Shown one piece after another: positions 3,995 to 63,700 of a stretch of DNA of 64,000 bases (positions within the stretch are counted from its first letter, which is position 1; every line of letters starts with the position of its first letter). The stretch covers positions 5,084,001 to 5,148,000 of the forward strand of contig OZ281498.1 in NCBI GenBank assembly GCA_965637545.1, written 5' to 3'. The DNA is from Phallusia mammillata. Its lineage: Eukaryota. The notes under the pieces were generated by a model. It was not told the DNA's origin. It ran no database searches and worked only from the letters and a program-made list of their open reading frames with translations. The translations under genes were made by a program, and so were the position numbers.

Positions 3995-4020
3995 CGCTGG
4001 ATCCACACAAAAAGAGAAAG
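3995..4020 (-). promoter_or_regulatory. RPL8 non-coding exon 1 starting with a 5' TOP motif
   Basis: Minus strand CTTTCTCTTTTTGTGTGGATCCAGCG|gtagg: a C followed by a pyrimidine run, typical of ribosomal protein mRNAs. Confidence 0.75.
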
Positions 4021-4319
4021 ATTTAGTTGCGGGACTTGTCATGTCGTGCTCATAATCTCGATTCCAAACTTGTAATTTTTAAATTTGTTTGGGGACTTCA
4101 ACAGCAAATTTGCAAATAAAAAACATACAAATTTACACTGATAAAATTTGATTTTCGTGGAAAATGTATATTAATTACGTTTTGCTTTAAACCTTAAATT
4201 AATTTGAGTAAAAAATGAAATACGACATAGATACCGTATGCATGTATATACAGCCTGGTTCACCATGGCGTTGGATTAAAAGTATTTATTCGAACACACG
4301 CTTCTATAAAACCATAGAT

Positions 4320-4654
4320 CAGGAGTCGGCAACCCCTGGCACGCGTGCTAAGGTTGGCACGCGAGGTGTTTTTTTATGGAACGCCAACCTATTTGCGTGT
4401 TTATATTAAAGTAACAATTTAACCTGTTACACTGCTTGTTTATAGTTTTTATCGTATCATTGTTATAAAATTCAGCCTTACATGCACAAAACACACTGCT
4501 TTATTATTGATATTTTGATATTATTGACTCTTTATTATTGATATCTGCTGGCACGAACCACTATTATTTAGAAAAACTTTGGCACGCGAGGTCATTAACA
4601 CATGGAAATAACAAGTAAATTGGCACGCGTCGCCTAAAAGGTTGCCGACCCCTG
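4320..4654. mobile_element. hAT-type MITE
   Basis: TIR caggagtcggcaacc / ggttgccgacccctg, 8-bp TSD ccatagat, internal ggcacgcg repeats. Confidence 0.9.
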
Positions 4655-9502: not shown

Positions 9503-12500
9503 ATGATGTCTCCATCAAGTGGGCATTCCTCGGCCAGTGGAGAGTTATGGGGCTTCCCGTTAATGCCAAATAAAATCACTGTGGATATTCTTTTGCCCAC
9601 TGGAATCTACATTTCCGTTGACACCACCCGTGAGTGTGGCCTCATACAATTAAAGAGCAAAGCCTGGGAGCTTGCCCGTGATCAACCTCTTTTCCAGCTG
9701 TTATCCGATCAAAGTTCCTATGTATTTGTTGGCATAACAAAGGATGCAAAGCGAGAGGAATTTTATGATGAACAACGCCGGATATGCGATATTCATTTGT
9801 TTCAGCCTGTGATAAAATTGGTTGAGGCCGAGGGCAATCGAGAGGAAAAAATTCTAAAAAGAGCCATAACACAAGCCATTGGAGTGTCAGTCAGTGAATT
9901 TGAACGCACCAAGAACCCAGAAGTTGAAGATTTCAGAAGAAATATTGGTGCAATGTGTAAGGCAGCTGTTGAAAAACGGAATTCGTCCACAAATCCACAT
10001 GACATGATTGCATACTCTCATCCACCCAAGGTTGAATCATCTCCAAATTTACCTAAACACACTTGTGAAAATTTGCTTGGAAAAAACTCTGTCGTGATTC
10101 GTGTGTGGATGACACAGAAAAACTCATATCAAACAAATAAGTCTGTTTGTGTTGCTTACAATGCTACACCTACTGCCATTATTAATGAGGTTTTAAGGAA
10201 GAAATCCCGTTCGATGATAAAGCAAAATAGTAATTCGGACATGCAGAAAATCTATGTGCTTAAAGTTTCCGGCCTAAATGAATATTTGGAAGGAAACTAC
10301 CCCATCAGCCAGTATAAATACGTTCGACAGTGTATTAACAGGGATGAGCTACCTGATTTGGTCCTGGTACAGACACATGATGTTTTAAAGACCCTTTCCA
10401 AGTGCCAAGATTACATGCCAGCAAAAATTCCCAAATACAAACAGGAAACAAGAGTTCACAAAAGCTTTTTTGCTGTGTCAGTGACAGACAACTTTCGACT
10501 CCGTGTTAGCTCTGGAAGTTACCTAAATGTTGGCGATAATCTCTATGTATATGTATGTTTGTACCATGGTACAACCGCACTGTGTTTACCTCAGAAAACA
10601 GTGGAACTTGACAGCACAGAAGCGCCTAAATGGAATCAGTGGCTTGAGTTTAACATTTCTGTTTGTGACATTCCAAGAGCCGCAAAACTGTGCTTATCAG
10701 TTTGTGGTGTCAGAAAGAAGAAGGATGAACATTGGCCACTCGCTTGGGTAAACATTCCTCTGTTCAATTACTGTGGTCAGTTGGTCCAAGGTCAGTACAC
10801 TGTCGGCTTGTGGCACCCGCCATGTCATATGGATGGATTTCTTCATCCTATTGGTATCAGTGGATCCAATCCATGCAAAGAGATGCCCTGCCTTAAACTT
10901 GAATTTGACACCTTTGGAGCTGTAGTCAAGTTTGCGAATGACAATCCAGGCAATGATGATGTGGATGAATATGCATTTCTTGACACATCTCCACAAAGCA
11001 ATCAGAGTCCCAATGATTTTGATGACAGAAATACCAAAGAAACCATCATGCATGTGATTCAGAACATTGCTAATCGTGATCCTTTATACCAACTTACAGC
11101 TGATGAAAAGTCAATGTTGTGGAATTACAGAATTATGTGCATGAGCATACCAGAATCTTTGCCTAAGCTGTTGCAATCTGTACAATGGGAGAAAAGGGAA
11201 AGTGTGAAAGAGATGTATGGAATACTAAGAAATTGGAAGCATGTAGCACCAGAGGTTGCTCTTGAATTACTAGATAGCAACTATCCAGACCCTGTGGTAC
11301 GTCAGTTTGCAACAAAATGTCTGGATATAGGATTGACGGATGATGGTTTGCTGATGTATTTGCTGCAACTCGTAACTGCTTTAAAGTTTGAGGCCTATTT
11401 GGATAATGCTTTATTTCGGTTTTTGCTGTCAAAAGCTTTCACTAATATGAGAATTGGGCATTATCTATTTTGGCATTTAAAGTCTGAAATGCATGATGTA
11501 CAGGTGTCAATGAGATTTGGTCTGTTTCTTGAAGCATATTGCCGATCATGTGGAGCTTACCTTCCACAACTGGTGCGACAAACTGAGATAGTTGAAAAGC
11601 TTGTGAATGTCAGCACCATTTTACAAAAAGAAGATACTGTGTCACAGAAATCTCTCAGAGATCATTTAATGAAGCCTGATTACGAGGAGCTTTTGAACCA
11701 CAATTTAAGTGCCCTAAACCCTGCATGTGAACTGAAAGACCTGTGTGTGGATATGTGTGAGGTCAAGTCCTCAGCAAAGAAACCAATTATTCTTCAGTGG
11801 AAAAGTAGCAACACCATTACTGACTGCACCCCATCAATTCATGGAATACTATTTAAAAATGGGGATGACCTTCGACAAGATATGCTAACTTTGCAGATTT
11901 TGCGAGTCATGGATGATATATGGCAAACTGACAACCTGGACCTCTGTATTTCTCCCTACATGTGTATCTCCATGGGTCAAAATGTTGGCATGATTGAGAT
12001 TGTTAAACATGCTGAAACAATTATGAGTGTGCAAAAGAAGGGTGGTGTTGTTGGATCGCTGCAACTTAGATCAGGTACACTACACCAGTGGCTTAAAGAC
12101 CACAATCAAGGTGAAAAGCAATATCACAAAGCTGTGTACAACTTCACACGATCATGTGCTGGCTATTGTGTAGCAACTTTGGTGCTTGGGATTGCTGACA
12201 GACATAATGACAACATCATGATTAAAAAGAATGGCCAAATGTTTCATATTGATTTTGGCCACTTTTTAAACCACAAGAAAAAGAAGTACGGAATCTGCAG
12301 AAATCGTGTCCCATTTGTTCTGCCAGGTGATTTTATGCGCATAATTTGCAGAGGTGCTGCATCAGATATTGCTAAAACGGATGACTACAAGAACTTTGAG
12401 GATCTTTGTTGCCGTGCCTACCTCTCCCTTCGAGCCAAGGCAAATGTCATAATCAACTTATTGTCAATGATGCTTGGTGCTGGAATTCCTGAACTTACCT

Positions 12501-21245: not shown

Positions 21246-21931
21246 ATGCGGCTGGCGAAAGTGCGGCTGGGGAACCTTTGGTGTTGCAGTTAGTGTGCCT
21301 GGGTATACTCAGTAAGTATAGAATTAAAAGCTAAAAAAACAAATATATCCCCAACTTTCAAATAGATGCCCAACGTTCATTAGAAACTTGGCAATAAGAA
21401 TTCGGTCAACTTCAACAACTTGCAAAACACGATAAGAATCACCACACCAGTATCATGTCGGATTGTCGGTGTTGAAATTGAACACAGGAACCCGGCACTC
21501 CAGTCTTTACTCTCGTTCATCTGGAACATTTTGCAATATATCCTAACGTTGTTTAATTAGGATTTAAATTGTATGTATACGGCCGCCGGCCGGATTTTCT
21601 CCGTTAACATGAATAAAAAAATTTTGCAATGTTTTCCGGGTCGAGCTATCTGCTTTGCGCAGTGTTATGTTTGTTTGTACGCCGAATTTGTGCAACGTTT
21701 GTGGGAGTGATGATCGCAAAAGTACAAATGCTTATGTTTAAAATGACGGAACGATCACATAGCTACATACCGTTATTTCTATTCCGGTATTTCGTTTTGG
21801 ACATTTGACATGAAACAGCTGCTTACAATTTCTCGTCGTCGCGCCAGAATAGTAAATAAGAGATCCAACGATGTTGTTTTGGGGTCAATCTTTTAATTTT
21901 AAATGACAAATGTTGTGTGACGTTATAACGT

Positions 21932-26096: not shown

Positions 26097-29000
26097 ATGT
26101 CCCGAGCTCAAGCAGAAAGCGTGATAAAAAATATTATCAGAGAAATAGTGCAAGAATGTGCGAGCAAGGGACACAGTCTATCGGAAACATTAGTAGCATT
26201 TATGGTCAAAGCTGTGGTCTTGGACCCTCGGAATGAGTTTAATGTTGACAGAACGTTAACGAAGGACGATGTTCAAAAGTTAATCAAGGTAACGAATATT
26301 TTAATGCTAATCTTAGGCAATTCTTTAATACCTTGTTTTTGTGTTCTTCAGTACTGTGTAGAGAGATTGATTGATGTGAGATCACCAAGTCTTGACACCA
26401 TAAAAATGCAAGTTTACTTTGACATGAATTATACAAGTCGCCGTGAGTTTCTTGATGAACATCGAAGAGTATTAGATGCAAGGTTGACTCCTGTAACAAG
26501 GGAAATAACTGACAGCAGAGCAAGGTACCATTAATTAAAAAAATGTAGCACATCACTAAGTTTGCCAACAAATTAAAACTTGGTGCGAAATTGTTTTGTC
26601 AAATCTTATGTCCACAAATTTTTTTGTTTAAGAATTAAACAACAATTGATGACTTGACTTATGATTTACACCGCTTGATTGTTTTTCGTTTAGAACAAGA
26701 GAAGAATTGGAAAGTTTGTATCGCAAAATTGTTTCCTATGTGCTCTTAAGATCTGGGCTTGGTTCACCCACGGACATTGCTGTGGTTCGAGAAGCTACTG
26801 GTAACTGAAGTATATATAATAATAAGAATTTATTTTTTAATAAATAATATTCACTACAACTCTCAACAGCTGCACTGCAGAGTGTTTTCCCACAAACTGA
26901 ACTTGGAACTTTTATGTCTCTTACAAAAAGAGACAAAGAAAGGCAGCTTCAGGAATTGACTTTAATTGTTTCTGGAATCAGACTGTTTAACAAGGAATGT
27001 GGAAAGGGTGGAGAAGGAATTGATGATTGTAAGTTGTTTAGTGCAATGCAATTCCAAATATGTACCATAAACTGCAGATTATTTTATCTAAATTGCATCG
27101 CTGTGTAGTGCCTGGAATTTTGAATGAAGCAATACCAGCTACAACACAAAATGTTGACATTGAAATTCAAAACAGCCAGCAAGCAGCATTTAGGTAGGTA
27201 TAACTGTGCGATCAAAATAGCACCATTACCATACCATTTGTTACAAACAGGTACACAACCTTGGTAGAATCCTTGCAACAGCATGACCCCCTTCCTTCAC
27301 CAAGTGAATTTCCAATTCAGCTGTTAAAGGATTCCCTAATAAATGTCAGACAACATGAAGCATTTTTAAGAATTTTGCTGGTAGGTTTAGTGATGCACAG
27401 ATTTTTCCTAACGATGCTTTTAAAATATGAATATTTTGTCAAAGAATGACATTATTGGATGTGCACAACAAGTTGAAATGTTAGTAAACCAACTTAGCGC
27501 AAGAATGGAACAACTTCAACAAACTGTTCAGTCAAAAACTGCAGTCCCCACAGCACAAGTCTATGTAAGTACAACTCGTATACAGGTATTGATTGTTTTG
27601 TTTGCAAATTGTGATTATTTATCTGTTGTAGCCTCAATTCATCAGCATTTCACACTTGTGGACATGTTTTCAAGATGAAATGGTTCTTCTCAGTGTGTTG
27701 AGCAATATTTTAGCTAGCATTGAACCTTTTACGAGGTAAGATGATTGTAAAACTTTCAAAATTTCATTATTGTAGCAATGATATTTTAAAGGACTCAGCG
27801 GGACATGTTTCCCGAAGAACTGGTTGCACCACACATACAGAACCTGGAAGTAAAAACAGATGAACAAAGGATTTTAGAGACCATGGGTGGGTGGGTTTCG
27901 TCATATGTTACATCCATTGTTGAAAAAACTTTTGAACTTGTAAAGTAATTATTGCAAAAGATAAGAATTAATTTCTTGTGCAAAGGTAGTTGCACAATTG
28001 AGCCTTATGATTTTGTAAACTTATACACAAAAATAGGAAATCGGGTGGATCCAGCAGACTTTAAAGACAACCCTGCGATACAGTGGTTGTTCCCAGAGAC
28101 AACCAAAAATTATGACAGATTACTTCTACAATACAGAGGATGTTGTGGATATGCAATTGTCAAATATGACAGATTGCTATTGCCTGGTAAATACCAAGGA
28201 TTATTTGTGTGGTCAATATTTACATGACTCCTTGATGTATGTTACTCCTTTTTAGGAAATCCTGATATTGGAATCATGCAATACCAGGAAAAGCTGTACG
28301 TGTTTAGCTCCAAAGCTGCAGCATATGAATTTGCCCGAAATCCAGAAGAGTATATTACACTTGTTGGTGAAGCTGCTAAAAAGTCACCAGAGTTGATTCA
28401 GCTGCTTGAGTTGCATCAGCAGTTTGCGGCTATTTCACCATATTCACAGGTACGTTTAAACGTAACGCCACTATAATTTTAATAATGAAACGTTGGCAGG
28501 TTTTTTGCCCTTTGCAAGAAACCTACACTCACTATTTACTTTGCCCATGTATTTAAGAGCAAGTGTGGCCAAATGTAGTCATGCTTAGTGGCCGGTTGAT
28601 TTTCGTTATAATACTCTCAATTGGCTTGGCGTATTATGAATTGTATATGAGTGTGCCGTGATCGCTGATCTGCGTTAACGCTTCGGGGCTGATCCCAGTT
28701 TTAAAATTTATGTTTATCTTAACAAAAAACTGCAAAAGTTTGACTTTTATCAAAAAGTGTGTAATAATCAGCACTCAAATCGTGCGTACCAGGTGTTTCT
28801 GACTCTAGTTTAGGGCAATCCAATCTTCTTACACACACAAGTAGCCTAGTTGCTTCTTCTTGGACTAAAGTAAAGAATGTTTTTTTGCAGGGAGAAGGTG
28901 GTAAGTTAATTGAAAAGCCAGTTACCAAATCTGACAGTGGAACTCAAACGGACACTCACATTCTTGAAGAAAATATTGTTAAGGACTATGAGTGGAATGA

Positions 29001-46323: not shown

Positions 46324-48685
46324 TCATACTAAAGTTTTTAGTCCACAAACTTCTACTACGTATTTAAGTGATACACACTAAATCTTTTAACAAATTATTT
46401 TAACCAGATTACCAGGTTTGCTCGTGTATGCAAAAATACAATTTCAACAAGGTACAAAAAATAAACACAAAGTGAGGCTACAACTGTACAAAAACGTGTT
46501 GATCTACAATCACGCCAGCGAAAACATGACATGGTAACACATAATATCAACTTTTAATGTGAAACAAGCCTAACTACACGTAACTAATGTTTCATAACTT
46601 CCCTAAACATTCCATCATTAACAAAATGCAAACAACAAGCACAGAAGGTCAGCTGACTGAAACATAACAAAGCATGACGTCACATGCAATAGCAAAGACA
46701 CTGATATTCATCCGCGCATGATTTTATTTGCATGGAAAAGCTTTTTACTTGCAATATACACGATTTTAGCTTTTGTTTAATAAACGCAAATTTTATGTTT
46801 TACGATGGTTGCAGGTTTTTACGTATTTAATTTCAATACGTGTCCAATTCCGTAATTGATTCGTTCATGGTACATCCAGTTGTTTTTTTAAGGTGTTTTT
46901 GCAAATTTCTCCAGCGGTTTCCCAAAATTTGCCAGTAGCCTAATAAATAATTCGTTTAAGCAAATATGGCTATTTTTTGGTATTTAAATGAAACGCTTGC
47001 GGTCTCTTAAAACTACTTAGCGGTCACCCAAACTAAACCTTAAAAAAAAACCTGGTCATAGGCATTAAACAAGTGTAAATCACATTTGTCACAAACTTAA
47101 AAAATAAATAAATATTACGTTCACGTTTGAAAATATAGACATTTTTTAAAACCCGAAAACGTGACATTTTCTATTGGCTCCAGGTATCTACGAGGTCCGA
47201 AATCTTAAAAATTGTATAGCTGACCGGGCTTCAAAATCAACCAAGGTCTAGCAATGAAAATTTATTACAGCTCATATAAGTTAATACACCTTCGATTCAA
47301 TGCGAAAGTTTACAGGCCTGGTAATGAACTCTTCAACCCTCCAGTGGTTGTCGATCACCGGCCTAATCTTGCATCTCTATGCACCTCAGTGACCAGTACA
47401 AATAACTACGTTTGCGTAAAGTCAAAAATATGAAGGTAAATAGTTATGTTATGACGAACTTACAGAGGTAAGGTTTGGGATGAAAAGGTGTTTTGTAGAC
47501 ATTTTTTTTAAATTGTTAACTTTGTTGGTAATATGCTGGCCTGGTGAAGAAAAACAGACCTGTCTCTTGGTCTGTCCATCCAAACAGGATTTAGGTGGTA
47601 CGCAAGGATGGAAAAAGTCGTTGGGTGGTACGAGATCTCTACAAGGTTGAGAACCACTGTCTTAAGTGAACAAAAACTTGCAAAATTTAATTTTGAAAGG
47701 GTAATGAATTACTACGTTATCCCCCCGAGATTTACACTCTGCAATAAGAGAAGCCAGTGGATCGAATAGGTCGCAGTTCGGCAGTTCTTCAACGGGCACG
47801 ACAAGTCCGTATTTCACTTTACTCTTTTAGCACTTGGACATGAGATTTCGCACTGTATCTATGGATAGAAATTGAAGTAGTACCCTTTTTTAAGCACACC
47901 AAAACTGAAAGCCATTATTTTTTTTAAGTTGTGAAACAAAAAATACCACATCGAATTTGAACGCAATAGTTTTACAAAGACAACCGATAAATTCAGATTG
48001 CCCGAGGCAGAGTGGTTTAAGTATCGTGTAAGAGAAAAGAATCGGCGAGTAAAGCACACTTTTTTCACAACACAACGGCGACAATTACGATGCGCCCCAG
48101 GTTATACTTCAAGAGACAACGATATAGTGCCCAGGCACAAAAGCGCGGCGAGAAAATCAATACGGTCGAGGGCGCGTTTTTCATCGACTCAAAACTTTGC
48201 TCTTAGACAATTTGAGAGATGCAGAAGTTGAAGCCATGTTGTATATTTCGTTGCATTACAGACCGGTGAAACTCTCGCCTACTCTGCGATATCGGTATTT
48301 TTTACCCAAGGCTTTGATAATTGAGTTTATAATCCCATGCAGTGACAGAGTTAGAATTAGGACCGGAATTTTACCTTTTTAACAAACCTCTGCGAGTGTA
48401 GGATATACAAAGCTATTGACAAAAAGTCAATACATTTGAACAGCTTTGTTGCATTCAAACAGGCGACCAAACAGTGATGGCGTAAGCCTCTTCGACGATG
48501 CTTTGACAATCAATATTATAAATCGCAGTAAACACATGAAGGCATTGGTTGGAAAAGGTAATACCCAAACAGCAGTTTGTTTAAATTTTCAGCAAAGAAG
48601 TGGGTTCTTTGTTTAGCAAACTGGAAAGTGTACAGACTGTCGTTGTTGTCTATTTTGTACGACAAATTGGATTATCATAAGAAAA

Positions 48686-50401
48686 ATGATGTCCACCGTT
48701 TTACAAGTGATTGGCTTCATACTTGGAATTCTTGCTTGGGTTGGAATGATAGGAACGTGCGCCTCGCCGGAATGGAGAAAGAACAGCAACGGGCAGACAA
48801 TTATAGACAGTACTTTGAGGTATGAAATGGTAACATATAGTACATAATTAGTAACCTAAAGAAATGGATAGCACGGTTTGGAAACTGGATCGTTTTATGG
48901 ATGTACGTTGGCAAAAAAAAACATCTTGCAAGTATTGGTGCCCTAAAAATTGCTTTCTAAAATGTCGACTATTAGATTGAAAGCCGCTTTTTGTTACGTT
49001 TGGTTTCAAACAAATTTGTTATTCAATCGGTGTGATGTACTACTTGTTTTTCAAGAACAATTGGTTTTAACATGTGTTTTTGTTACACAGGATCCATTGC
49101 CGACTAAACCTAAAACGTGTGGTTAACTTTAAATTAACAATTTGCTGCACAAACGCATGTTGTTTACAATGTCGTTTATATTGCTACTTATAAGAGTAAT
49201 TTTCTTGTGTAGGTATGACGGTCTATGGATGAAATGCAAAGCTTTTGTTACTGGGCAAACGCAGTGTGATTCATACAATGCCGTGTTCTTCGGTTTGCCA
49301 GGTAAAGAAAGTTTGGACATTCACTTTAACGTTTTTGGAAACTTGGGTGCCAAGTTTTATGGGTATTACCTATTCAATAGCGGAAAACGCATGTTTAACG
49401 CTGCCTAATTACGCAAACTGCAGAGATTTCTTTAAAGGGAGCTAGGGCCGCGGCCGAACGGTAAAATCAATACATCTGCTCATAAATTGAAAATGCACAT
49501 AGCCACCGAACGAGGAGCGGGTTGCATGAACTCGCCAAACTCATAAGCGAACCCAGAGCAACAACAACTGTCAAAGTATATTTTTCTTTAAAAGTTTTTG
49601 TCGCAAAATCAATTTTGATCTGCCAGCGATCTGAAGTAATTCAGTGCTTAACGGTAACTTGAAACGATTTCCCTTAGCGTCATTCGCATCCATTATTGAT
49701 TCGAAGAGTTTTAATGCCGTAAGATGCAGTAAAGTTTAATGAGCCGCTGGCCCAATTGGCCCAATGAAGTTTATTAATTGTTGACGAGGTTGCACTTAGG
49801 CCGCAAACTTCAACACTCGAAAGCTGTGTTCCAGGAAGCGTCAACAAAGAGGACAAACTTTATGTTAAAACGTAGCCGACACATTGGTACGAAGTTGCAC
49901 TAACAAACTCATTTATTTTTTTTTGAAATTTAAACAATTGCAGTAAATATTAATTCTCTTTTTTTCACATGTGTGATATCATGCCCCGCGCTTAGTCCGT
50001 GTGATAAAACATCTTGTCAATTTTGCTACTGAAAATTCATCATTAGCACGGAGTAACATTGCGGCAATGTTTAGTTGACGTTTGATATTTTCACGGACCG
50101 GTGTCATATTTCGCTTGTGCATGCTAATCGATATCTCAGTAAGCTCGGCCCAAATGGACGCACATAGGCGACAGTATGACCTGCAAATAAAACGTCCAAT
50201 GCATCAAATGATTTTATTTCGTTTTGTATTTTACAGAGGTCCTCCAGATATGCCGGGCTTTGGTAATTACCTCTATTGGCGTAGGCTTCATCGCTATTCT
50301 TGTTACTATCTTCGGGTTAAAATGCGTCAACGCAGGTTGCGGTAGCGGCCGTGTAAAACCAAGAATATCTTTAATTGGAGGATTGTTGTTCGGTATAGCA
50401 G
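48686..50401 (+). CDS. Claudin, shared N-terminal exons 1-3 (48686-48819, 49213-49301, 50237-50401): TM1, ECL1, TM2
   Basis: MMSTVLQVIGFILGILAWVGMIGTCASPEW...YDGLWMKC...TGQTQC..LQICRAL...GLKC carries the claudin W-GLW-C-C signature. Ends in a phase-1 donor at 50401. Confidence 0.93.
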
Positions 50402-51069
50402 GTAAGTCTGATTACGAATCCATTCTGTTTTCAAGTAAAAGTCATCTGTTGTGTTTGTCCAAAGCATGAAAGGTGCTGGTGTGTAGGCTGCTAATGCATG
50501 GAGGTGAAATAGTTCATCAGTTATTGGCATGTCATTCATTTGCTTAAATATGGGCTGGGCCTTTCTTCAAATGAGTGGAATTTAATAGCCTTCAGCGCAG
50601 GATTACTCAAAACCTGGTTGCTTTTAATTGGAGGCTTTATTAGGCCTTATGTGCGCTTTCAGTGTTTTGACTTTTATTTATTTTACAGCCGTTTTGAAAT
50701 ATCAACTCACTTGTCACAAGAGGGTATTAATGCAAGTAACAACATTGAAAACATTTTAATGCTCACAAAATACTTTTTATTTTGGCCGCAGTTTTTTGGT
50801 TTGTTTTTGGGCTGGTTTAGATTAAAGTTCTTCACCCCTTTAGCCACAAACGTCTCTTTGTTTTGATGACCAAAAGAAAACCAAAAACGTTTCCAAACGA
50901 TTGTTAATTAACCATTCATGGTATTGTTAAGCAATTTGTTGTAATATTTTCTGATTACACCGCTAGTAAAGACTCCTACACTAAATAAACAGCGAAACTC
51001 TTCATAAAGAAACCATAAACGTTTCAAAGAAACTATAACAAGAGTTGTACATTCATTTTACGAAATTAG

Positions 51070-51386
51070 GACTTTGTACTGGAGGTACAGTCTATTTCGC
51101 TTATCAATGGTCATCGCAAGACGGCTACAGTGTAATGAACGGATTTTACGTGGCCATGGGTACAGCTTTTGATGCTTTGTTGGCATCAGCTCTTCTCATC
51201 GCTGGGTCACTCTCATCGTGTTCCAACGCAAAGGAGACAATTAAATCACAAGCATATTCCTTCCGACGAAGATCGGTAAACTTACTGACCCGTCGTGAGG
51301 ATCGCCGGGACTGTATTGCCGATAACTCCAAACCTAGTCGAATTCGCGGAGCTCAGAACCCTGTGTGCATCACAGATTATGTATAG
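51070..51386 (+). CDS. Claudin alternative terminal module A (TM3-ECL2-TM4-tail, ends -DYV)
   Basis: ttag| phase-1 acceptor; GLCTGGTVYFAY...LLASALLIAGSL...ITDYV-stop. Confidence 0.75.
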
Positions 51387-51697
51387 AAAATGTTATGATA
51401 CCTTAATAGCCTGTAGACTGCTGTTTTTTTCCAAACGCCATTACCTCCCTTGGCCCCACCCCATCCAACAAATCAAAGTGTGCAAGCCACTAGTCCCCTC
51501 ATAAATATTTTATTACTATAGTCGCATTTTATCTTTTGCTTGTGGCTTCTTTGACTTTACTAACCCCATTCACTCGACATTGACTAATATTGCATCGCTG
51601 AAGCACGAAGTTTCAGACTTGTATATCGTACCTTAGAATTTTAGATAGCTGCACATATTATGCAACACACGCGTACTCAGCATATATATTACGCAAG

Positions 51698-52158
51698 GCA
51701 TTCACTGTGGAACAGCAGCTTGGGTTTTCGCGAAGTGCGTGAACGAAAATTGTCTTGACATCGAGCAAATCACTGGGGCACGCTTTCCTCCACGCGGAAC
51801 AACCATCGGGAGGGGGATCTATTTGGGTTGGATTTCAGCAGCTCTGTCGTTTTTATCTTGTTTATGTTCACTACAGCTTTGTCACAATAAAGAAGTATCT
51901 GTATCCCTAACCCACTATGAACCACGAAACAGTTTACCTATGGGTACTTATTATACACACCACTTGTCCTCTGTGTCAAATAATAGTTGCGTTGGGAGCG
52001 CTTTAAAATCAAACCCTTTGGCAACTTGCCAGACTTTGACTTCAAATGGTCTGGATAAATGGCTAACCCTAGCTGGTTCCATGTCAACAATGAGCGACAG
52101 CAGTTCTAATGTGAACGTGGAAGTATTTTCGCCCTACCTTTGTACTACCCGTGTTTAA
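51698..52158 (+). CDS. Claudin alternative terminal module B (ends -TRV)
   Basis: caag| phase-1 acceptor (weak pyrimidine tract); GIHCGTAAWVFAK...GRGIYLGWISAALSFL (claudin TM4 motif)...CTTRV-stop; AATAAA at 52267. Confidence 0.7.
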
Positions 52159-52676
52159 CTTTATATATTTTTGTGCATGTTTAATGTTTTGCATGTTTTC
52201 TGTTGGTGTGATCTGTTTGTGGTGTTGTATATTTTTCTGAATTTGACTAATTTTATACTCGTGCGCAATAAATCGTAAAAAATTACAATAACTAGTGCAT
52301 ATTCATTAAATATAACGATGATTAATAGTGGTGGTTTGAATCGGTGCTTCTAAAATTCGGCCAGACACTTGAGGAGCTATATCTAATTGGCTTGCCATTC
52401 ACTTAATCTAAAACCTACTGAATTGCTTAAACACTCGCAAATTGAAAGCATGTTATGTTGTCGTCCGCTATCGATCGGCGAATTTGCTTGATTAACTAGC
52501 TCCCCGCCCAGGTCCGTTTTCAAGTCTCTGGAGAACCTGCAAATGTAATGTTATTGTTGCAAGCCAACTGTCACTGTCTGTCGTTGGTGTAGCCTCACCT
52601 CACGTGCAAGCTTGCGCGAGAGCGGCGTTGTTTGCATCTGACATAAAACTTACATAGTTTAAAATTTACCCTTTAG

Positions 52677-53370
52677 CCGCCCTGATCGGAGGCGCCGTGT
52701 CGTACTATGCGCACGGCGTTGTCCAGGAGTACTACAACCCCATATTGGAGGACAAAAGGCCCAAATTCCTTCGTTTAGAGTACGGATATGCTTTGTTTAT
52801 CGGTAAGTTTAAGCGCATATATGTCAATAAGTACGTGTGATTTGACACAGTAATATCAGGTTATTATCTCTTCCAGGTTGGGCAAGTTTAGTCGTTGGCA
52901 TTCTCGGAAGCGTCCTTATTTGTGCGGCTAGCATCACTATGTTGGTAAAACATAAGCCACAACCACATACCACCCATGTTCACGAGCTTAGGCCTTTAAG
53001 CATCGTACCAAACCCGACGAAATTGGATCCAGTACCCGTGCAAGTTTACCGCGCCACACCGCAGTCCTCCGGCAGGCAAGTAAGAATTCAGAAAAATCCA
53101 ACGGCTTCTTCATCCCACAACGGAACGGACAGACCGAGAACAAGCTCCGGCTCGTCCACAAACAAATCTTCCACATTAACTCAAAACGCCAAGGCCGCAC
53201 ATCATCCACGCCACAACCATCATACACACCAACATCATGGTACTGTACCACGCGAAAGGGCCATCGCGGTAGATCAAAACTCATCGAGGTCTAGGCGGCG
53301 TCGAAGCTACGACGAAGAGATGCCCAGGCGTTCGCGACCGGCAAGAGGACAAATAAAGCAATATGTGTAG
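52677..53370 (+). CDS. Claudin alternative terminal module C (exons 52677-52802, 52877-53370; ends -QYV)
   Basis: ctttag| phase-1 acceptor; AALIGGAVSYYAHGVVQEYYNP...LEYGYALFIGWASLVVGILG (canonical claudin TM3/ECL2/TM4); long His/Arg/Ser-rich tail; QYV-stop. Confidence 0.88.
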
Positions 53371-53979
53371 CAATACAAAAGGGCCAAATGTCATGATCAA
53401 TACCTGGTGTATGGGAGCAAAATTTAGCTCCTAGGTTTGTACACCACAACCTCAATTTTTATGCAAACCAAAGTGGAGTAAAATTACATTTGACTCCGGA
53501 CACCTTACCAGTGAAAGTGATTTCCACACAAACAAACATTATCACAAATCATGCCGTAAAATATTTCAGACATAAAAAGTTTCTATTCCATAACTTAAAC
53601 AACCACGGGTCTGAAACTTATGTCAGCATTCTGTAACATGCGTTGCCTGCCCTGCCTTGTGTATTTAAATACGTTTTATCACTTTCTAGCAAAATGTGCA
53701 TGCTACACAGCTGGCTGTTAAAAGAATGAAAATCTTTTGAAATCCATAACCTATTTTTCAGTCATCCATGCCAAAATAAGGGTAACAATTGATTTTGACC
53801 CTGCATGTCAGTCCAGCAATCTAGAGAAAATCTGAACATTTATTGAAAAAAGGCACCAGAAAGTAAGAAAAATGTTTACATAGTAAACAACTCATTGAGA
53901 CCTAGGAGATTTGGACCATCTCGTTTCCCTTTTACTTTAGGTTTTTTTTTACTCCAGTTTTGTGCACATCTTTACCATT

Positions 53980-55066
53980 TCTACTTTTTTCCTGCTTGAT
54001 TCTCACACAATAAAGTCTCAAAATGTTTGCTTTTGTAGGTATCATGTTGGCAACCCATCACTGGTGTCATACCTTTGCAAATTTTGCAGTTGATTGCTTA
54101 GCCTTTTTCACAAATAGTGGAAGATTATACTTGTATTCAGCTGCCTGTAAAATGATCATTCAACATGAGGTTCAAGACTTTAAATGGCATTAAAAACAGA
54201 AATTTTTAAGAGGATGAAACACAACAATCAACACTCTACAATGCCACATCCACCAAACTGTCCAAACTTCAATCAATTGGAATATTGTTTTAAAACTGTA
54301 CCTCTTAATCATTGGATGCTAGTGGGGTTAAACTAATAAAATACCGAACCACAATGACCCAAACTAGTTCTGTAAAATTGTCCCAATCAGCTGCTATTTA
54401 AAATTTTTGACCATTATAGGCATTTTGGGCAACAACTAGTCACAGGTTTGAGGTCATCAGGAAGGTTTATTTTATATATGCTCAGTTGCACTTGAGAATA
54501 GATCACAGAAACCAGAAAGCCTACTATATAGTCAAGAAAGCCTACTATATCAGCCATAAGGGGGTCATCTGGGTTTGGTTCATTCATGAGAAGTTGAAGG
54601 GATGTAAGAACAGAACTTATGTTTAATGAAGGCTTCCAAGAACCCTGTTGATGAAAAAACAACAACATTGAAACCAATCATTGTGGCAAATAAAAAACAA
54701 AACTACCTGTGGTGGGCTTTTTAATATATCCAGGCAAATTCTACCATTTGAATCAATGTTTGGGTGATATATTGGTGTTTTAAATTGCAACAAAGGTGGC
54801 TCAAATGGATAACGATCTGGTAGAATGATATCAATAGAAAATACTCCATTTTCATATGGTGTCCCTTCACACCCAATAATCTCTGTGGTAAATAACATTT
54901 TTTTAATCAAATGTATCTGATTTATGTGAAAAACATACATATTGACAACATACATACGTGCTTTTAAATGAAATTTGTCAGGCTCCTCTAGCCAGCAGGA
55001 AATGCATGGTGGAGGATGTGTAGTCAGCATTTGAATCTCTCTCTTTAGCCTAAGTGTCCTTTGCAT
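53980..55066 (-). CDS. UBE2T: Ubiquitin-conjugating enzyme E2 T; exons 55066-54958, 54882-54707, 54644-54546, 54144-54073, plus an unresolved short last exon near 54000
   Basis: [10 protein letters not shown]...GTPYENGVF...YPFEPP...[62 protein letters not shown]. Stop position uncertain. Confidence 0.9.
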
Positions 55067-55638
55067 GTTTTACTGTTTTCGCCTGATTAGCAAAGTTGCA
55101 AGCCAACTGCCACTGTCTGAGACTAGCAAAGACCGGTCAACTTTGCGTTATTTTGTTGGGATTGGTTTCGATTGAATACACCCAACGACTCCACAATTTC
55201 AGTGACAAGGTAGAGGAAAGTGACGTGTGGGGGTTTTCCCTGTTTGCGTATAGCGTACGCTCTATTAAACGTGTTTTACAGTCTTTGGTAACCGTAATTT
55301 GTACTATAAAAGACAAACTGCTTTTGCTTCAGATGTTAAGGTTTGATCGGATACGCATGAATGCTGCTATTTATTTTTTGCTGTAAACAAACCGTAGTTT
55401 GTAGTTTGAACACTCTCATCGTCAGGTTGCTGGTTTTGCGGTAAAGCGGATGAGTCTTATTATCACTCGTTTTAACATCTAATTTTGTATGAAAAGTAAT
55501 GTTTATGTTAAAAACCTCATTGGTTCTTTATGGAAACCTTTTGCATGAAGCGCAAGTCGCCACAACCCAAAAACTTCCGCCGCGGCGTCGCACTTTGGAC
55601 ACCATGGCATAAACAAAACATGAAAAAGCTGAACTTTA

Positions 55639-58199: not shown

Positions 58200-58535
58200 A
58201 TGTTCTCTCGATCGTCGTATTGGTGTCCGGATTTGTGTTTTTTTCTCCGCCACGCCGCTCTTTTCGCCACATTTCGGCAAAATATTGGTATTCAAGCTGA
58301 GACTTTAGCTCGGTTGTGTTCCCCCTTGATTCGTTCTTGTGGCCCAGACGGAGCTTGTTCTCGGCCTGTCCTTTCCGTTGTGGGACGAAGTAGCCATTTG
58401 ATTTTTCTGTATTTGGACGTGCATGCAGGAGGATTGTTGGGTGGCGCGGTAGACTAGTACGGGTACCAGTAGATTAGTACGGGTTCCAATTTGGTAGTAT
58501 TTGGTACAATGCTTAAGGGCCTGAGAAACATTGCG
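58200..58535 (-). pseudogene. Inverted degenerate duplicate of the claudin module C tail exon
   Basis: Minus strand encodes RPLSIVPNTTKLEPV...VYRATQQSS..VQIQKNQMATSSHNGKDRPRTSS, versus RPLSIVPNPTKLDPV..VYRATPQSS..VRIQKNPTASSSHNGTDRPRTSS at 52990-53160. It carries a 20-nt frameshifting duplication and an in-frame TAA at 58307. Confidence 0.85.
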
Positions 58536-58591: not shown

Positions 58592-61500
58592 TCAACTTAT
58601 AGAACATCGCTTCTTTGGTTGTGCAACTTCACGAGGCCTCCCACCACTGCTTGCTGCAGTTGCTTTTGGTATGTCTGGAAGGCCACCAATGTGGCGTTTC
58701 TGCAAAAATAACCAACTTCTGACACTACACTCGGTCAAGATTAACCAAGTTTTAACACCTACACAGATACAATCCAAGCACAAAAATCAGAAAGAGAATG
58801 TTTGGCGTTTTGACCACAGATTTAAAATTTAAATTTATTTATTTACAGTGCACAATAAAAAAATTCTATGGTAAACAAAGTGAAGAAAAGGTTAGCAAAG
58901 TGAATAAATTATGGCAATAGTGTAAGAGGATGACATAAGATATAACATAGGTCACAAACAAACTCTGGTGCAAAACTGGCATGCAACATGTATTGGTTAT
59001 AAAGTATGAAAGTCATGCAAATATTTCAAAGAACCAGACACTAGATGCGTTTCTACTGATGAAATTACACCTTTTTAACTGTTTTGTTAAGGAATAACTA
59101 CTTACCCATTTGAAGTTAGCTGTTTGCAAAGCTTTTGCTCCTACAACTGTAATAGCACACCTAAAAACATCAAGGTTTTCAAGATTGCTCAAACAATCGG
59201 CCAGAACAATTGCACCCTCATCACCAAACCTGTTGTCTCTTAGATTCAAATAGACCATCTGTAAATATACATGCAGTTTTGTCAGGTTAAATTCAATGTA
59301 ATTTGTGACATGTGTGCTGTGATGCATGTTTTCTATTTATTTTAAACAACAACAAAAAGACAAAAACAAATGAAACCAACGACAGAAGAAAATATGATGA
59401 GAAAAATGGTTGGGGATTTAAAAAAGCGAATTATTCCACTGAACCTTAATCTTCTTTAAAATTCGTGGTTCAGCCATTGAAATTCAACAAACCAAAGCTT
59501 TGGTACATCACTGCTACCACCATTCAAACACATCGTCTATCGAATATGGTTTGTCACATAATGTGATGATGAAAATGATATTGTGTGTGCCTTTCCCACA
59601 AAAATCTTGTAACTTAACAAATGCAACTACTATCGACTTTCAATCAGAGCATGAACAATTCACAAAACATTTTTCCTCCAACATTAGTTTTGTGGTTCAC
59701 TTTCACAATTGGAAACTTAAAAGTAGCTTTCTCACTGAGTGGTCCATGTCAAGGATGGCAGCAACCAATGCTCGCAAGCAAGTGATGGTCAAATTACATT
59801 TACACAACAACAGTTGACGAATGTTGTTGATACAAGACAACACAAGATTGACACCAATCGACTCAATGTTGTTTCCTCCCACACCAAGGATATTCATCTG
59901 CAAACAGATTGGTTGAAATTCGAACCATCTGCTGTGGAATTTGAACCTACAACAGGGGTTTATCTTGGGCTGGCTTTTGAGCTAAGTAGGTATATGTGGG
60001 GATGGCTCTTGAGCTTAATCTTAAAAATCACACACACTTGCAGGGTTTGGATGGTGAGACAAATTAGATTGGTACTGTTTTTTTATTAATTTATTATTGT
60101 ATTTATTTTTTATTTATAATTTATTAATTTATGCTCAGAATAGTATTAAAAACAAAATCTCTAGAATGAAAAAGAAAATGGTGACCACAAACATATAAAG
60201 AGCAAAACCCTAAATGTGCCAACCAAAAATAAAAACATGAAAACTTTTTTTGATATGTAAAAAATCGGGTTAACATTAGTAGTAGTGATGGGACGGGTAC
60301 CCAGTATCGATGGTATCGAACGATTTCAGTGGTTTCGATACTCGTACTCGGTATCGAAATATTTTGCCTCAGTTTTCGATACCAACGTGCGAGTACCAAA
60401 GGCCGATTTACACCATAAGAATACGGGGAACTTTATGCCAATATTTGCTTCGGACAGCACAAAACTGGAAAAAAGTTCCGCCAGTTTACGCATATCTTTT
60501 TCGCTATCACGTGGAGATTACATTTTTCGGCATGTGTGTGTGCACGCCTGTACCCCGACCATGGCAGATAAATTAGCCAGTGATATACAACTAAGTACAA
60601 CACTACACCTAAGTACTCGATAATCGTACTCGGTACTCGGTATCGAAGGTATATACATGTGGTACTCGTACTCGGTATCGGTACTCGCTTCAAAACCTGG
60701 TATCGTCCCATCACTAATTAGTAGCTTACTGGTTTTTGCCGCTTGCTGATTTCATGGCACAGTTGTTCAAGACCATCACCTGTGACTGAACAACTATCCA
60801 AACCCAGCCCATCAAGTTTATGGACACCAGATGCAAAATTGTCCAAAGCACTCTTTGACATCACATTTTCACTGAAATTCAACCAGATCATCTACAAATC
60901 ACCAAAATGCATATGTTATCTGATAAATATCTGCATTGTTTAATTTCTGTCAAAAATACTTATCCTAATGAACAACGCTAAATATTGGCACACAATTACT
61001 TTTTTCATTGCTTTTGTTACAACAATACTGTTATGTAAACTAGCAATCTATTTGCATTGGCATAAAGGAGCTTAATTATTATTATTTTTCTAAACACATT
61101 GGAAGTTAAAAACAACAAAGTAGCATTGCAATTGTTTATGAAGTTTCGTTAAAAACTATGTGATTGGAACTATGTTGTATCTTGTTACATAAAACCTAAC
61201 AAACTTCAAAAGTTGTGTTAAAAAGGAATGTTAAAAAGTTAAACACAACAAATGTTACATTTGTATCTCGTTTTGTTGTGGCTTCTGCTATTGCATTGAA
61301 ATCTTCCTCTTGCAAGTTGCAACTATAAAGTGATAATACTTGCAACATGTGCATGGATTTAGCCACATACTTCCCAATACCATCGAGTTTGTTGCTAGAC
61401 AAGTCAAGAAAAAGTAACTGTAAGACACAAATATGAAATTTGAAATTTTATAAAATGTAAAATGACCCTTTGCATTTTGTGAAGATTGTGTTATTGATTA

Positions 61501-63700
61501 GATTTACAGTCAGTCATCAATAACCTGCAAACTATAAAATCACATACATGGATGTTATGTTCTGTGATGACATCAAATAGATTTTCCACCATGGGAATTG
61601 TCAAACCACAAGCTCGTAGTGTCAATTCAGTGATACCAGGAAGAAGCTCCATAATAATTTCAAAATGGAGTGTTAAATTAAATTCCTTTAAATGCAACTT
61701 GGGAATCTAACAAAAAAGTGTATAAGCACATCATAATATTTGGCCTACCTACAAGCTGCAAAAATAACAAGTAGCAATTAATATTTTAAATCTTATCATA
61801 ATACTTTCGATTTCAAGTTTCTTGTAATACCCTTTAATACCACAATAGAGTTGATGTTGCAAACCCATTATTTACAAAATTAACATTTAAAAAAAATGTT
61901 TTTTACTTTGTATTTGGATTGTTGAACAGGGCCAAGTAACATATGTAGACCTAATTCAGTGAAAGTGTCTGGATTCCACCAATCCCCCACTTGAAGCTGG
62001 CGAGGTTCTTTCGAAGCTGATAAGACATGACAGGAACTCATTATTTGGTGGGGAAGAAAATTTCCTGACAGTAACAATGAGCCAGGAAGGGAATTGGCAA
62101 CAGCCTTGGTAAACTCATCATCTTTGGACTCATTTGCCCAACTGCACATGTTAAAAAGAGTGGGATCTTTGTCTCTTGAATTGAACTTGTTTACATGTGG
62201 AGATGTTTTTTTGACGTTATGAAAGTATTCTCTTGGTGTAATAGGGAAATCATTAGGTAACTCACTCAAATGGGGGAGAAGCTTTTTGGCTTGGGTTTTC
62301 ACAATCTTTTCCTTATTTTTTGATTGCTGGGTATGAGGAAATAATATTTTCAGTTTGTCTTGGACTTCTCGATGACAAAACCCAAATAGAAAGCGGACAA
62401 CCACATCCCAGGAACTTTGTTGAAATATCTGTTCAATCTTGGACAAAAATTCCTCATAAGATGCAAATACCATGAGATGAAGTGCAGCCAAAAACTCCTG
62501 CCATGTGGCATGAATGAAAAAAAAAGTTTTTTTCCCATCTAAAATCAACAAACCATGTTGTTGTGGATTTTTAGCATGAGTACACATAAATGGCTCAATA
62601 AATTTAATTTCTATGCCATGTTTCTCAAAATCGCTGCTGGGAAACGAAAACTGTCTATTTTCAACACCACTAAAAGCCAGCTTTGTTAGTTGTTTTAAAT
62701 GCTTTCTATCAGTATGAAATTTTTGCTTGTGCTGCCATCGCTCAAGTTGACTCAGAAATACATCAGAAGTTGACAAAACCGGTTTGTTTGACATCAAGTT
62801 GTCAACAAAGTATGGAATGATCAGTTTCGCAAAGATTGGAATAAACAACAATGCAGATACGTTGGGTTGTTTTTCCAGCTCATCTTGGACATGTTTAAGT
62901 TGCTCTTCAGTTTTAGAATACTGTTTGCAGAGAAGATTTTGAGATTCTTTGCTGAGACCTAAAACTTGTAACATAAATTCCGGCTTGCATTTTGGGTTAA
63001 AGTTCAAAAATGCATTAGGTCGAGAAGCAATCAACTTTTTTGCTTTGGGAAGTAAGCGACATTTTACCAAATTCATCAGGATACAGTAAGCTGGTTTCTC
63101 TTCATAAAGTGACATGCCATATGGATGTTTGGAGAAATCACCAGTTATTTCTGCTTCATCCAGCCCATCAATCACAATCAATGTGTTTACAGATTCATTA
63201 ATTTCTTTTAAAATTAAATCATCTTTTTTCTGTTTAAATTTGTGGTCATGATCAGTGGACACAAGAAGGAACTTCAGAACACTGATTTTTTCTGCAAAGT
63301 CAACATCACGTATAGAAATATAGAACACAAATGAATGAGGATATGACTCAATCCAATGCTTCAAAACAAATTTACAAAATGTGGTTTTTCCTATTCCTGC
63401 AATTCCGACTAGTCCAGTCACATTTTGCTTGCTACTGTTTTCATGTGATGATTCCCTTTTCTCATTGTATGCACAGGCTGCTTCCTCAAAAATATTTTCT
63501 GGCATTATATTTTTTTTGTCAGATTGTTTTTTGAACAACCAGCTGCTTGAGTTTCCAAATTCTTCTTCACTCACATTTTCTTGTTTTGTTGCTAGCAGAG
63601 GAACGCGGTCTTTTAGTTTGGATAATGAGCATTTCAGGAAATTTCTCCAAGATTGTTTTTCGGAGTATGTGACTGCTTTTTTCAAAAAACAATCAGTTAA
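58592..63700 (-). CDS. NACHT-LRR (NLR-like) protein, 3' part; exons 63700-61907, 61706-61548, 61417-61259, 60891-60730, 59897-59736, 59258-59106, 58699-58592; N-terminus upstream or off-window
   Basis: Walker A GIAGIGKT, Walker B LIVIDGLDE, sensor IASRP, winged-helix FIHATWQEFLAA, and phase-0 LRR exons (LDLSSNKL, LNLRDNRFGDEGA). Confidence 0.88.
60283..60716. mobile_element. hAT-like MITE in NLR intron
   Basis: TIR tagtgatgggacg / cgtcccatcacta, 8-bp TSD attagtag, internal tactcggtatcg repeats. Confidence 0.9.

What the first reader, a model, noticed from the sequence alone, without database searches (positions are those of the whole stretch)
48686..53370. One claudin N-terminal half with three interchangeable C-terminal halves (alternative TM3-ECL2-TM4-tail modules)
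Seen: exons 1-3 (TM1, ECL1 with W-GLW-C-C, TM2) end in a phase-1 donor at 50401. Three downstream units each begin with a phase-1 acceptor (51070, 51698, 52677). Each encodes its own TM3-like, ECL2 and TM4-like segment and a different tail, and stops at a PDZ-type terminus (-DYV, -TRV, -QYV). I found no second ATG/TM1/GLW exon between them, so B and C cannot be independent genes. Known: vertebrate CLDN10 and CLDN18 swap their FIRST exon (ECL1); ECL2 mediates trans-adhesion and C. perfringens enterotoxin binding, and the tail binds ZO/MUPP1 PDZ domains. Inference: alternative splicing/polyadenylation yields three claudins with the same ECL1 pore selectivity but different adhesion loops and scaffolding, the mirror image of the vertebrate strategy. 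I do not know of this being described.
Basis: partly seen in the sequence, partly recalled or inferred. Interest (0 to 1): 0.82.

Follow-up and report, generated by a model that had tools for sequence, protein, structure and literature searches.

The report
Sea-squirt claudin with alternative C-terminal halves
One sea-squirt tight-junction (claudin) gene joins a single front half to at least two, probably three, different back halves, an arrangement shared by distant sea squirts that I found in no paper.

Summary
Exons 1-3 (48686-48819, 49213-49301, 50237-50401) encode TM1, ECL1 with W-GLW-C-C, TM2 and the first half of TM3, and end in phase 1. Three downstream units (A 51070-51386, B 51698-52158, C 52677-52802 plus 52877-53370) each join in frame, complete a four-TM protein and end -DYV, -TRV, -QYV.

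RNA contigs from three studies show e3>C in all four runs laid, and e3>A in one run. In that run the A and C contig depths (35.8 and 27.6) add up to the depth of the shared exons (62.9). No e3>B junction was seen. The A transcript runs on through B, so here B lies in A's 3'UTR, and A and B share one terminal exon and probably one poly(A) site.

Both extra modules are old:
- A matches the C-half of Ciona "claudin-7-like isoform X2".
- A also matches an unannotated, splice-ready ORF in Styela clava.
- B matches Styela "isoform X2", including tail motifs.
- Styela keeps the order N-A-B-C and the same downstream UBC gene.

AlphaFold models of the A-type and B-type orthologues match solved claudin structures over all four helices.

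Verdict: a real alternative-last-exon claudin. A and C are shown; B is inferred from conservation. It is a new variant of claudin isoform diversity. The scan had not reported it before on other DNA.

The parts
48686..48819 (+). Exon 1 coding part: start codon, TM1 and the start of ECL1. The 5'UTR extends upstream.
   Evidence: Translation. Joint 48819>49213 in all 4 runs; RNA contigs start at or before 48300 (X2) and at 48404 (X14).
49213..49301 (+). Exon 2: ECL1 core with the GLW-x2-C-x10-C signature.
   Evidence: Joints 48819>49213 and 49301>50237 in all 4 runs.
50237..50401 (+). Exon 3 (165 nt): end of ECL1, TM2, intracellular loop and the first half of TM3. It ends in phase 1 before a GTAAGT donor and is shared by all isoforms.
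   Evidence: It is the only PF00822 match near this place in the genome scan.
51070..51386 (+). Module A coding part: outer half of TM3, short ECL2, TM4 and a 55-aa tail ending -DYV, plus the stop codon.
   Evidence: e3>A junction in X7, seen from both sides (loose ends 'ACTTTGTACT' behind 50402; contig 17 starts with the last 17 nt of e3). 38% identical to the Ciona X2 C-half and 25% to the Styela ORF, with a shared NPV-x5-V end.
51070..52230 (+). Terminal exon of the A isoform as transcribed. It runs through A's stop, the spacer and the whole of module B.
   Evidence: X7 contig 17 is continuous over 51068-52230 at depth 35.8, while the e3-A intron has depth 0 in that run.
51698..52158 (+). 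Module B open frame: outer half of TM3, ECL2 with C-x4-C, TM4 and a 95-aa tail ending -TTRV, plus the stop codon. Its use in this species is not shown.
   Evidence: Open for 153 codons from the acceptor caag|G. It raises the Pfam match to full length. Aligns with the Styela X2 C-half including tail motifs and the -TT-x-[VL] end. hhalign to canonical claudin C-halves: probability 82%, E 1e-5. No junction.
52267..52272 (+). First AATAAA after modules A and B; the likely shared poly(A) signal.
   Evidence: Pattern scan. X7 contig 17 ends at 52230.
52677..52802 (+). Module C, exon C1: outer half of TM3, canonical ECL2 (YYNP) and the start of TM4.
   Evidence: Joint 50401>52677 as contigs in X2 and X14 and as loose ends in X5 and X7; joint 52802>52877 in all 4 runs. 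59% identical to Styela over the core.
52877..53370 (+). Module C, exon C2 coding part: TM4 and a long tail ending -QYV, plus the stop codon. The 3'UTR runs on to at least 53941; AATAAA at 54009.

Best explanation
This is a single ascidian claudin gene that uses alternative last exons. Exons 1-3 make a constant front half: TM1, the ECL1 sheet that sets paracellular ion selectivity, TM2 and the inner half of TM3.

The phase-1 donor at 50401 has at least two fates:
- It is joined to C1 and C2. This gives the canonical claudin, which is the only or main spliced form assembled in two of the runs laid.
- It is joined to the proximal terminal exon at 51070. This gives isoform A, with a very short ECL2, a different TM4 and a different -DYV tail. 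Its mRNA ends after module B.

A second acceptor inside that same terminal exon (51698) would give isoform B, with a C-x4-C ECL2 and a -TTRV tail. That use is inferred, not seen.

In solved claudin structures (established knowledge), the outer TM3, ECL2 and TM4 form the groove for cis contacts and the loop for trans contacts, and the tail binds PDZ scaffolds. The isoforms should therefore keep one pore-lining ECL1 but differ in which partners they polymerise and pair with, and in how they are anchored.

Shown: the exon structure, the e3>C and e3>A junctions, the conservation of A and B, and the compatibility of the fold. Inferred: use of B and the functional consequences.
For: - Frames and termini.
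- Pfam PF00822 is passed by all three products.
- RNA: all constitutive joints appear in 4 runs from 3 studies. e3>C appears in 4 runs. e3>A appears in X7, where depths of 35.8 (A) and 27.6 (C) add up to about 62.9 (e1-e3), and the e3-A intron has no cover.
- Module A is conserved in Ciona intestinalis isoform X2 (P0007) and as an unannotated ORF in Styela clava. That ORF has a pyrimidine-rich phase-1 acceptor and a -HSV end (L001 27728-28047).
- Module B is conserved in Styela isoform X2 (P0008), including tail motifs.
- The order N-A-B-C and the downstream convergent UBC gene are the same in Styela.
- A and B are single-copy in this genome.
- AlphaFold models of the A-type and B-type orthologues were built with no alignment cover in the C half. 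They give four helices plus the ECL1 sheet (pTM 0.64 and 0.65). Their best PDB matches are claudin-3, -4, -9, -19 and -15 over 181-197 columns.
Against: - No e3>B junction in the four runs. Contigs cross the B acceptor unbroken in X5 and X7, so B use is rare or absent in those samples.
- All the RNA data are assembled contigs. Depths are rough, and tissue and stage are hidden.
- In X2, X5 and X14 the whole e3-C1 interval is covered without splicing, so part of the cover over A and B there is retained intron.
- Module A shows no detectable sequence homology to canonical claudin C-halves (hhalign probability 5%).
- The structural models are of orthologues, not of this window's products, and are of moderate confidence (pLDDT 55-85 in the C half).
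- No protein-level or functional data exist.
Confidence: 0.78

Rival explanations
1. There are only two real isoforms in this species, C and A. Module B is no longer used as coding sequence here and survives merely as part of A's 3'UTR. It may still be used in stolidobranchs such as Styela.
For: No e3>B junction and no contig break at 51698 in four runs from three studies. The A transcript reads straight through B. The B acceptor (tacgcaag|G) has a poor pyrimidine tract. No further B-type protein appeared among the best 150 of 922 hits in 1.84 billion representatives.
Against: The frame is open for 153 codons exactly from the acceptor. B keeps similarity to Styela B in the TM3-ECL2-TM4 core (37%), in the tail motifs (MG-x-Y, T-x-TSN, D-x-W-x-TL) and in the -TT-x-[VL] end. 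An unconstrained UTR would not keep these over such a divergence. The Styela B acceptor is equally weak (acaag|G), yet it is used in a RefSeq model. Contigs drop rare variants, and only four samples were laid.
Confidence: 0.28
2. A and B are decaying leftovers of old tandem duplications of the gene's 3' part. The e3>A join is splicing noise, and its product is not functional.
For: A and B evolve much faster than the N half or C (25-38% identity against 60-67% and 59%). A is not recognisable as a claudin C-half by profile comparison. In three of the four runs, the cover over A and B is continuous with retained intron.
Against: In X7 the A form is about as abundant as C and is cleanly spliced. 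The A frame, its acceptor phase and its NPV-x5-V end are kept in three ascidian lineages. The stop lies in a terminal exon, so nonsense-mediated decay is not expected. The model of the A-type orthologue folds as a claudin.
Confidence: 0.06
3. A and B belong to separate neighbouring claudin genes whose own 5' exons were missed.
For: Claudin genes do lie in clusters elsewhere in this genome.
Against: No other TM1/ECL1/TM2-like exon exists in the 64-kb window. The RNA contig carrying A begins with the last 17 nt of e3. RefSeq isoforms in Ciona and Styela share identical N halves.
Confidence: 0.01

Closest known systems
Vertebrate CLDN10 (10a/10b) and CLDN18 (18.1/18.2) alternative first exons
   Same: One claudin gene yields full-length four-TM isoforms by swapping a block that includes an extracellular loop. 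The CLDN10 variants differ in the first exon (PMC7140793).
   Different: In those genes the swapped block is TM1 and ECL1 (ion selectivity), and the choice is made by alternative promoters. Here the single first exon is constant. The swapped block is the outer TM3, ECL2, TM4 and tail, and the choice is made by alternative last exons.
C-terminal claudin variants in vertebrates (from memory, not checked here): CLDN19a/b tail variants, truncated CLDN18 and CLDN7 forms, CLDN10 forms lacking exon 4
   Same: Alternative 3' processing changes the cytoplasmic tail or the PDZ motif.
   Different: As far as I recall, those variants change or delete the tail or a TM segment. They do not replace it with an alternative, conserved TM3-ECL2-TM4 module that restores a complete claudin fold.
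Alternative last exon (skipped terminal exon) genes such as calcitonin/CGRP and membrane/secreted IgM (textbook knowledge)
   Same: One donor chooses between a proximal terminal exon with its own poly(A) site and distal exons. The outcome is two proteins with a common N part.
   Different: Here both outcomes rebuild the same membrane-protein fold from paralogous or analogous halves. The proximal terminal exon holds two nested coding modules, A and B.
RefSeq automatic models: Ciona intestinalis claudin-7-like X1/X2 and Styela clava LOC120327612 X1/X2
   Same: They are orthologues of this gene. Ciona X2 carries the A module, Styela X2 carries the B module, and the X1 models carry C.
   Different: They are database predictions only. 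Neither species has all three modules annotated, the Styela A-like exon is unannotated, and no paper I found discusses them.

Membership tests
Claudin (Pfam PF00822 PMP22_Claudin, classic claudins) | Score above the curated Pfam cut-off (26.7 bits) | tested here: met
   A 47.2, B 54.3 and C 67.4 bits. B and C align to model positions 2-157 and 2-160 of 161; A aligns to positions 2-114 only.
Claudin (Pfam PF00822 PMP22_Claudin, classic claudins) | ECL1 signature W-x(n)-GLW-x2-C-x(8-10)-C | tested here: met
   The PEW...YDGLWMKC...C signature is present in exons 1-2. W30, G48, L49, W50, C53 and C63 are invariant in the 61-sequence alignment.
Claudin (Pfam PF00822 PMP22_Claudin, classic claudins) | Four transmembrane helices with the claudin fold | tested here: met
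   Four hydrophobic segments in each product. The A-type (Ciona) and B-type (Styela) orthologue models best match claudin-3, -4, -9, -19 and -15 structures, with target TM-score 0.63-0.75 over 181-197 columns. The models are of orthologues, not of the window's own proteins.
Claudin (Pfam PF00822 PMP22_Claudin, classic claudins) | C-terminal -YV PDZ-binding motif | tested here: met
   A ends -DYV and C ends -QYV. B ends -TRV, which is class-I-like but not -YV. Orthologue ends: A -DFV and -HSV; B -THL; C -EYV.
Claudin (Pfam PF00822 PMP22_Claudin, classic claudins) | Forms tight-junction strands or a paracellular barrier | not testable with these tools
   Needs expression and freeze-fracture or electrophysiology.
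Alternative last exon splicing | One donor joined in RNA to two or more alternative downstream terminal units | tested here: met
   50401>52677 and 50401>51070 were both seen. 50401>51698 was not seen.
Alternative last exon splicing | Separate poly(A) sites for each terminal unit | tested here: inconclusive
   The A contig ends at 52230 and the C contigs end at 53903 and 53941. AATAAA lies at 52267 and 54009, and there is none between A and B. Contigs cannot show true 3' ends.
CLDN10/CLDN18-type alternative first exons | Two or more alternative TM1-ECL1 exons | tested here: not met
   There is only one such exon set in the window. Other claudin loci of this genome do seem to have them.
Tandem-duplicated alternative exons | The alternative units are recognisably homologous to one another | tested here: inconclusive
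   B against canonical C-halves: hhalign probability 82%, E 1e-5, in register. A against C: 5%. A against B: 1%.

The most novel reading that the evidence does not exclude
Ascidian claudin genes may in general be built as exon arrays, giving many claudins from few genes by combination. The arrays would hold several alternative first exons (TM1-ECL1), mutually exclusive ECL2 exons and alternative C-terminal halves. This would be the compact-genome counterpart of the vertebrate expansion to about 27 separate genes.

The gene in this window would be one conserved example. Two other loci of the same genome show N,N,(N),M,C,C exon orders. One of them has an ECL2 exon pair only 44 nt apart whose joint inclusion would break the frame.
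Probability: 0.35. Interest if true: 0.78.

Novelty: new variant of a known kind. Interest (0 to 1): 0.6.

Why it matters
Claudins decide what passes between epithelial cells. Which claudins can polymerise side by side and pair across cells is thought to depend on the outer TM3, ECL2 and TM4, and anchoring depends on the tail. So far this has been studied mostly with man-made chimeras.

Here evolution has kept natural chimeras: the same ECL1 on two or three different back halves, shared by distantly related ascidian lineages. This gives a direct way to ask what the back half alone contributes to strand compatibility, adhesion and scaffolding.

It also shows that the closest invertebrate relatives of vertebrates may diversify tight junctions by RNA processing rather than by gene number. 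In addition, it corrects annotation: there is an unannotated A exon in Styela, and B lies inside A's 3'UTR here.

Tried and rejected
- Word-index protein searches with the A module and the B module alone found nothing. The index needs shared 5-residue words, and even the known Ciona and Styela relatives were missed, so this blank means nothing.
- An exact look-up of the three spliced products found none in the 15-billion-protein collection.
- The profile search of 1.84 billion representatives (Styela B-type plus the window's B) gave 922 hits. Among the best 150, only P0008 carries a B module and only P0007 an A module. Tunicates are thinly sampled, so this does not bound the age of the modules.
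- The Ciona locus could not be fetched; P0006, P0007 and P0010 are not on record. Whether Ciona has a B module is unknown.
- MAFFT put the module-only rows onto the N half. Those alignments were discarded, and the structures were predicted with N-half-only alignments instead.
- Candidate isoform pairs of the second locus among database proteins (P0085, P0080, P0123) turned out to be separate genes.
- The reading of separate genes was rejected (see rivals).
- A link to Ciona 'Claudin.j, previously Claudin7', which is expressed in motor neurons (PMC12724666), is only a name resemblance to RefSeq 'claudin-7-like'. It was not tested.
Full report
**What the sequence shows**

The window comes from an ascidian (sea-squirt) genome of 240 Mb. 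The closest proteins are from Ciona intestinalis and Styela clava.

On the + strand an ATG at 48686 opens exon 1 (to 48819). Exon 2 is 49213-49301 and exon 3 is 50237-50401. Together they are 388 nt, so exon 3 ends in phase 1 before GTAAGT. They encode TM1, an ECL1 with the claudin W...GLW..C...C signature, TM2, the short intracellular loop and the first half of TM3.

Three acceptors follow, placing first exon bases at 51070 (A), 51698 (B) and 52677 (C). All three accept phase 1 and stay open to a stop:

| Module | Coordinates | Product | C-terminus |
|---|---|---|---|
| A | 51070-51386 | 234 aa | -DYV |
| B | 51698-52158 | 282 aa | -TRV |
| C | 52677-52802 + 52877-53370 | 335 aa | -QYV |

- All three products pass the Pfam PF00822 cut-off. 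C and B align to the whole model; A aligns through its N half only.
- Each product has four hydrophobic segments.
- No other TM1/ECL1/TM2 exon lies in the window, and modules A and B are single-copy in the genome.

**RNA**

Both run searches listed holders from several studies. Four runs from three studies were laid on 48300-54200. All are assembled contigs that carry spliced joints, so they are RNA.

- The joints 48819>49213, 49301>50237 and 52802>52877 are in all four runs.
- 50401>52677 is a contig joint in X2 and X14 and a loose-end joint in X5 and X7.
- 50401>51070 is seen in X7 from both sides. Two contigs ending at e3 continue with the first bases of A. A 1180-nt contig begins with the last 17 nt of e3 and then lies unbroken on 51068-52230.
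- In X7 the e3-A intron has no cover. The depths are 62.9 (e1-e3), 35.8 (A contig) and 27.6 (C contig), as expected for two isoforms sharing a front half.
- In X5 a contig starts exactly at 51068, which fits a branch at the A acceptor.
- No joint or loose end marks 51698. The contigs of X5 and X7 cross it unbroken, so B was not used at detectable level in these samples.
- The A transcript contains all of B. There is no AATAAA or ATTAAA between A's stop and B's stop; the first is at 52267. A and B therefore share a terminal exon and most likely a poly(A) site, giving two 3' ends rather than three.
- In X2, X5 and X14 the whole e3-C1 interval is covered without splicing, while introns 1 and 2 are almost empty. 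I did not explain this.

**Relatives**

The search with product C returned RefSeq isoform pairs.

- Ciona intestinalis claudin-7-like X2 (P0007) has the same N half as X1 and a C half that aligns with module A. Identity is 38%, with shared W, Y-[ST]-[VL]-M, FY[VI] and a G-[AS]-x-NPV-x5-V end.
- Styela clava LOC120327612 X2 (P0008) has a C half that aligns with module B: 37% in the core, with the same C-x4-C-x-D-x2-Q-I-x-G and IY-x-GWI. The tail shares MG-x-Y, T-x-TSN, D-x-W-x-TL and a P-x-L-x-TT-x-[VL] end.

In the Styela locus (L001) the order of parts is:

| Part | L001 coordinates |
|---|---|
| N exons | 10001-10135, 10693-10782, 21713-21895 |
| A-like ORF (unannotated) | 27728-28047 |
| B | from 28713 |
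| C | 33192 onward |

The A-like ORF has a pyrimidine-rich acceptor in phase 1 and ends -HSV. A convergent UBC-fold gene follows the claudin in both species.

The N-A-B-C layout therefore predates the split of these ascidian lineages. A and B evolve faster (24-38% identity) than the N half (60-67%) or the C core (59%). I could not fetch the Ciona locus, so whether Ciona has a B module is unknown.

**Are A and B claudin halves?**

- The B profile matches canonical claudin C-halves in register (hhalign probability 82%, E 1e-5).
- A does not (probability 5%), nor does A match B.
- AlphaFold models were built for the A-type orthologue (P0007) and the B-type orthologue (P0008 residues 1-215). Their alignments covered only the N half, so the C half was not guided by canonical claudins. 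Both models give TM1, three ECL1 strands, TM2, a long TM3, a short loop and TM4, with pTM 0.64 and 0.65 and C-half pLDDT of about 55-85.
- In both cases the best PDB matches are claudin-3, -4, -9, -19 and -15 over 181-197 columns.

**Mechanism**

The gene works by alternative last exons. The e3 donor either skips the proximal terminal exon and joins C1-C2, or joins that exon at 51070 (A), with cleavage after B. Use of the inner acceptor at 51698 would give B.

From published claudin structures (established knowledge, not tested here), the outer TM3 and ECL2 receive the neighbour's extracellular helix in cis. ECL2 also takes part in trans pairing, and the -YV end binds ZO PDZ1. I therefore infer that the isoforms keep one ECL1 pore lining but differ in strand partners, adhesion and anchoring. 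None of that is shown.

**Comparison and novelty**

- CLDN10 and CLDN18 swap the first exon (PMC7140793).
- The vertebrate C-terminal variants that I recall alter or delete tails rather than replace TM3-ECL2-TM4.
- Full-text searches for claudin together with ascidian, Ciona, tunicate, splice variant or mutually exclusive exon found no description.
- The isoforms do exist as automatic RefSeq models in two other species.

I class this as a new variant of a known kind.

**Wider lead**

A genome-wide PF00822 scan and a look at four other loci showed two more claudin genes whose exons lie as arrays.

- On contig C2 there are two first exons, each with its own ATG, then one TM2 exon, then two ECL2 exons and one last exon. 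The two ECL2 exons are only 44 nt apart and each is 3n+2 long, so including both would break the frame.
- On contig C4 there are three first-exon types and two ECL2 exons.

No RNA check was possible for these loci. Alternative ECL2 units may therefore be a general habit of claudin genes in this animal.

**Limits**

- Only one reads call was allowed, and it returned contigs. Depths are rough, rare junctions are lost, and sample identities are coded.
- The structure models are of orthologues.
- The species name is not established. It is an ascidian, judged from its closest proteins.

Noticed in passing
G000:C2:9795001-9805000 (L010), local about 2014-8080: A second claudin gene with exon arrays. 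It has two first exons with their own ATG, one TM2 exon ending in phase 1, two adjacent ECL2 exons and one shared last exon ending -EYV. The E3a donor and E3b acceptor are only 44 nt apart, and each ECL2 exon is 3n+2 long, so the pair looks like a classic mutually exclusive pair.
   Followed up: partly
G000:C4:22300001-22316000 (L008+L012): A third claudin locus with three first-exon-type ORFs (local 168, 1803, 4254), a TM2 exon at 5503, a second TM2 copy at 6872 that contains stops, and two ECL2-type exons (8310, 9943). The order N,N,N,M,M,C,C is not what tandem whole genes would give.
   Followed up: partly
window 58337-58525 (- strand) against 52987-53161: An inverted 189-nt copy (76% identical) of part of the C2 tail-coding region lies 5 kb downstream. 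The one frame I translated has stops, and no claudin exons lie around it. It is probably a decayed fragment.
   Followed up: partly
window 54414-55066 (- strand): A convergent ubiquitin-conjugating enzyme gene (PF00179, E 1e-25) lies just downstream of the claudin. A UQ_con gene sits in the same position and orientation in the Styela locus, so synteny is conserved.
   Followed up: yes
window 50402-52676: In runs X2, X5 and X14 the whole e3-C1 interval is covered by unspliced contigs at roughly 15-35% of the exon depth, while introns 1 and 2 are nearly empty. This could be selective retention or slow removal of the intron that holds A and B. It is unexplained.
   Followed up: no
window 59013-59327 and 61880-63685 (- strand): A 601-aa open frame with a GxxGxGKT P-loop and a downstream leucine-rich-repeat-like ORF. 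It looks like an NLR/NACHT-type gene.
   Followed up: no
P0006 (Ciona intestinalis claudin-7-like X1): After the C1 exon the RefSeq model ends in a sequence that looks like TM4 read out of frame, and it lacks a -YV end. This is probably a model or assembly error rather than a fourth module.
   Followed up: no
window 52556-52580 and 55095-55119: A 25-nt direct repeat (96% identical). An X2 contig leaves the locus at 52580 with 153 unrelated letters, possibly an assembly jump at this repeat.
   Followed up: no
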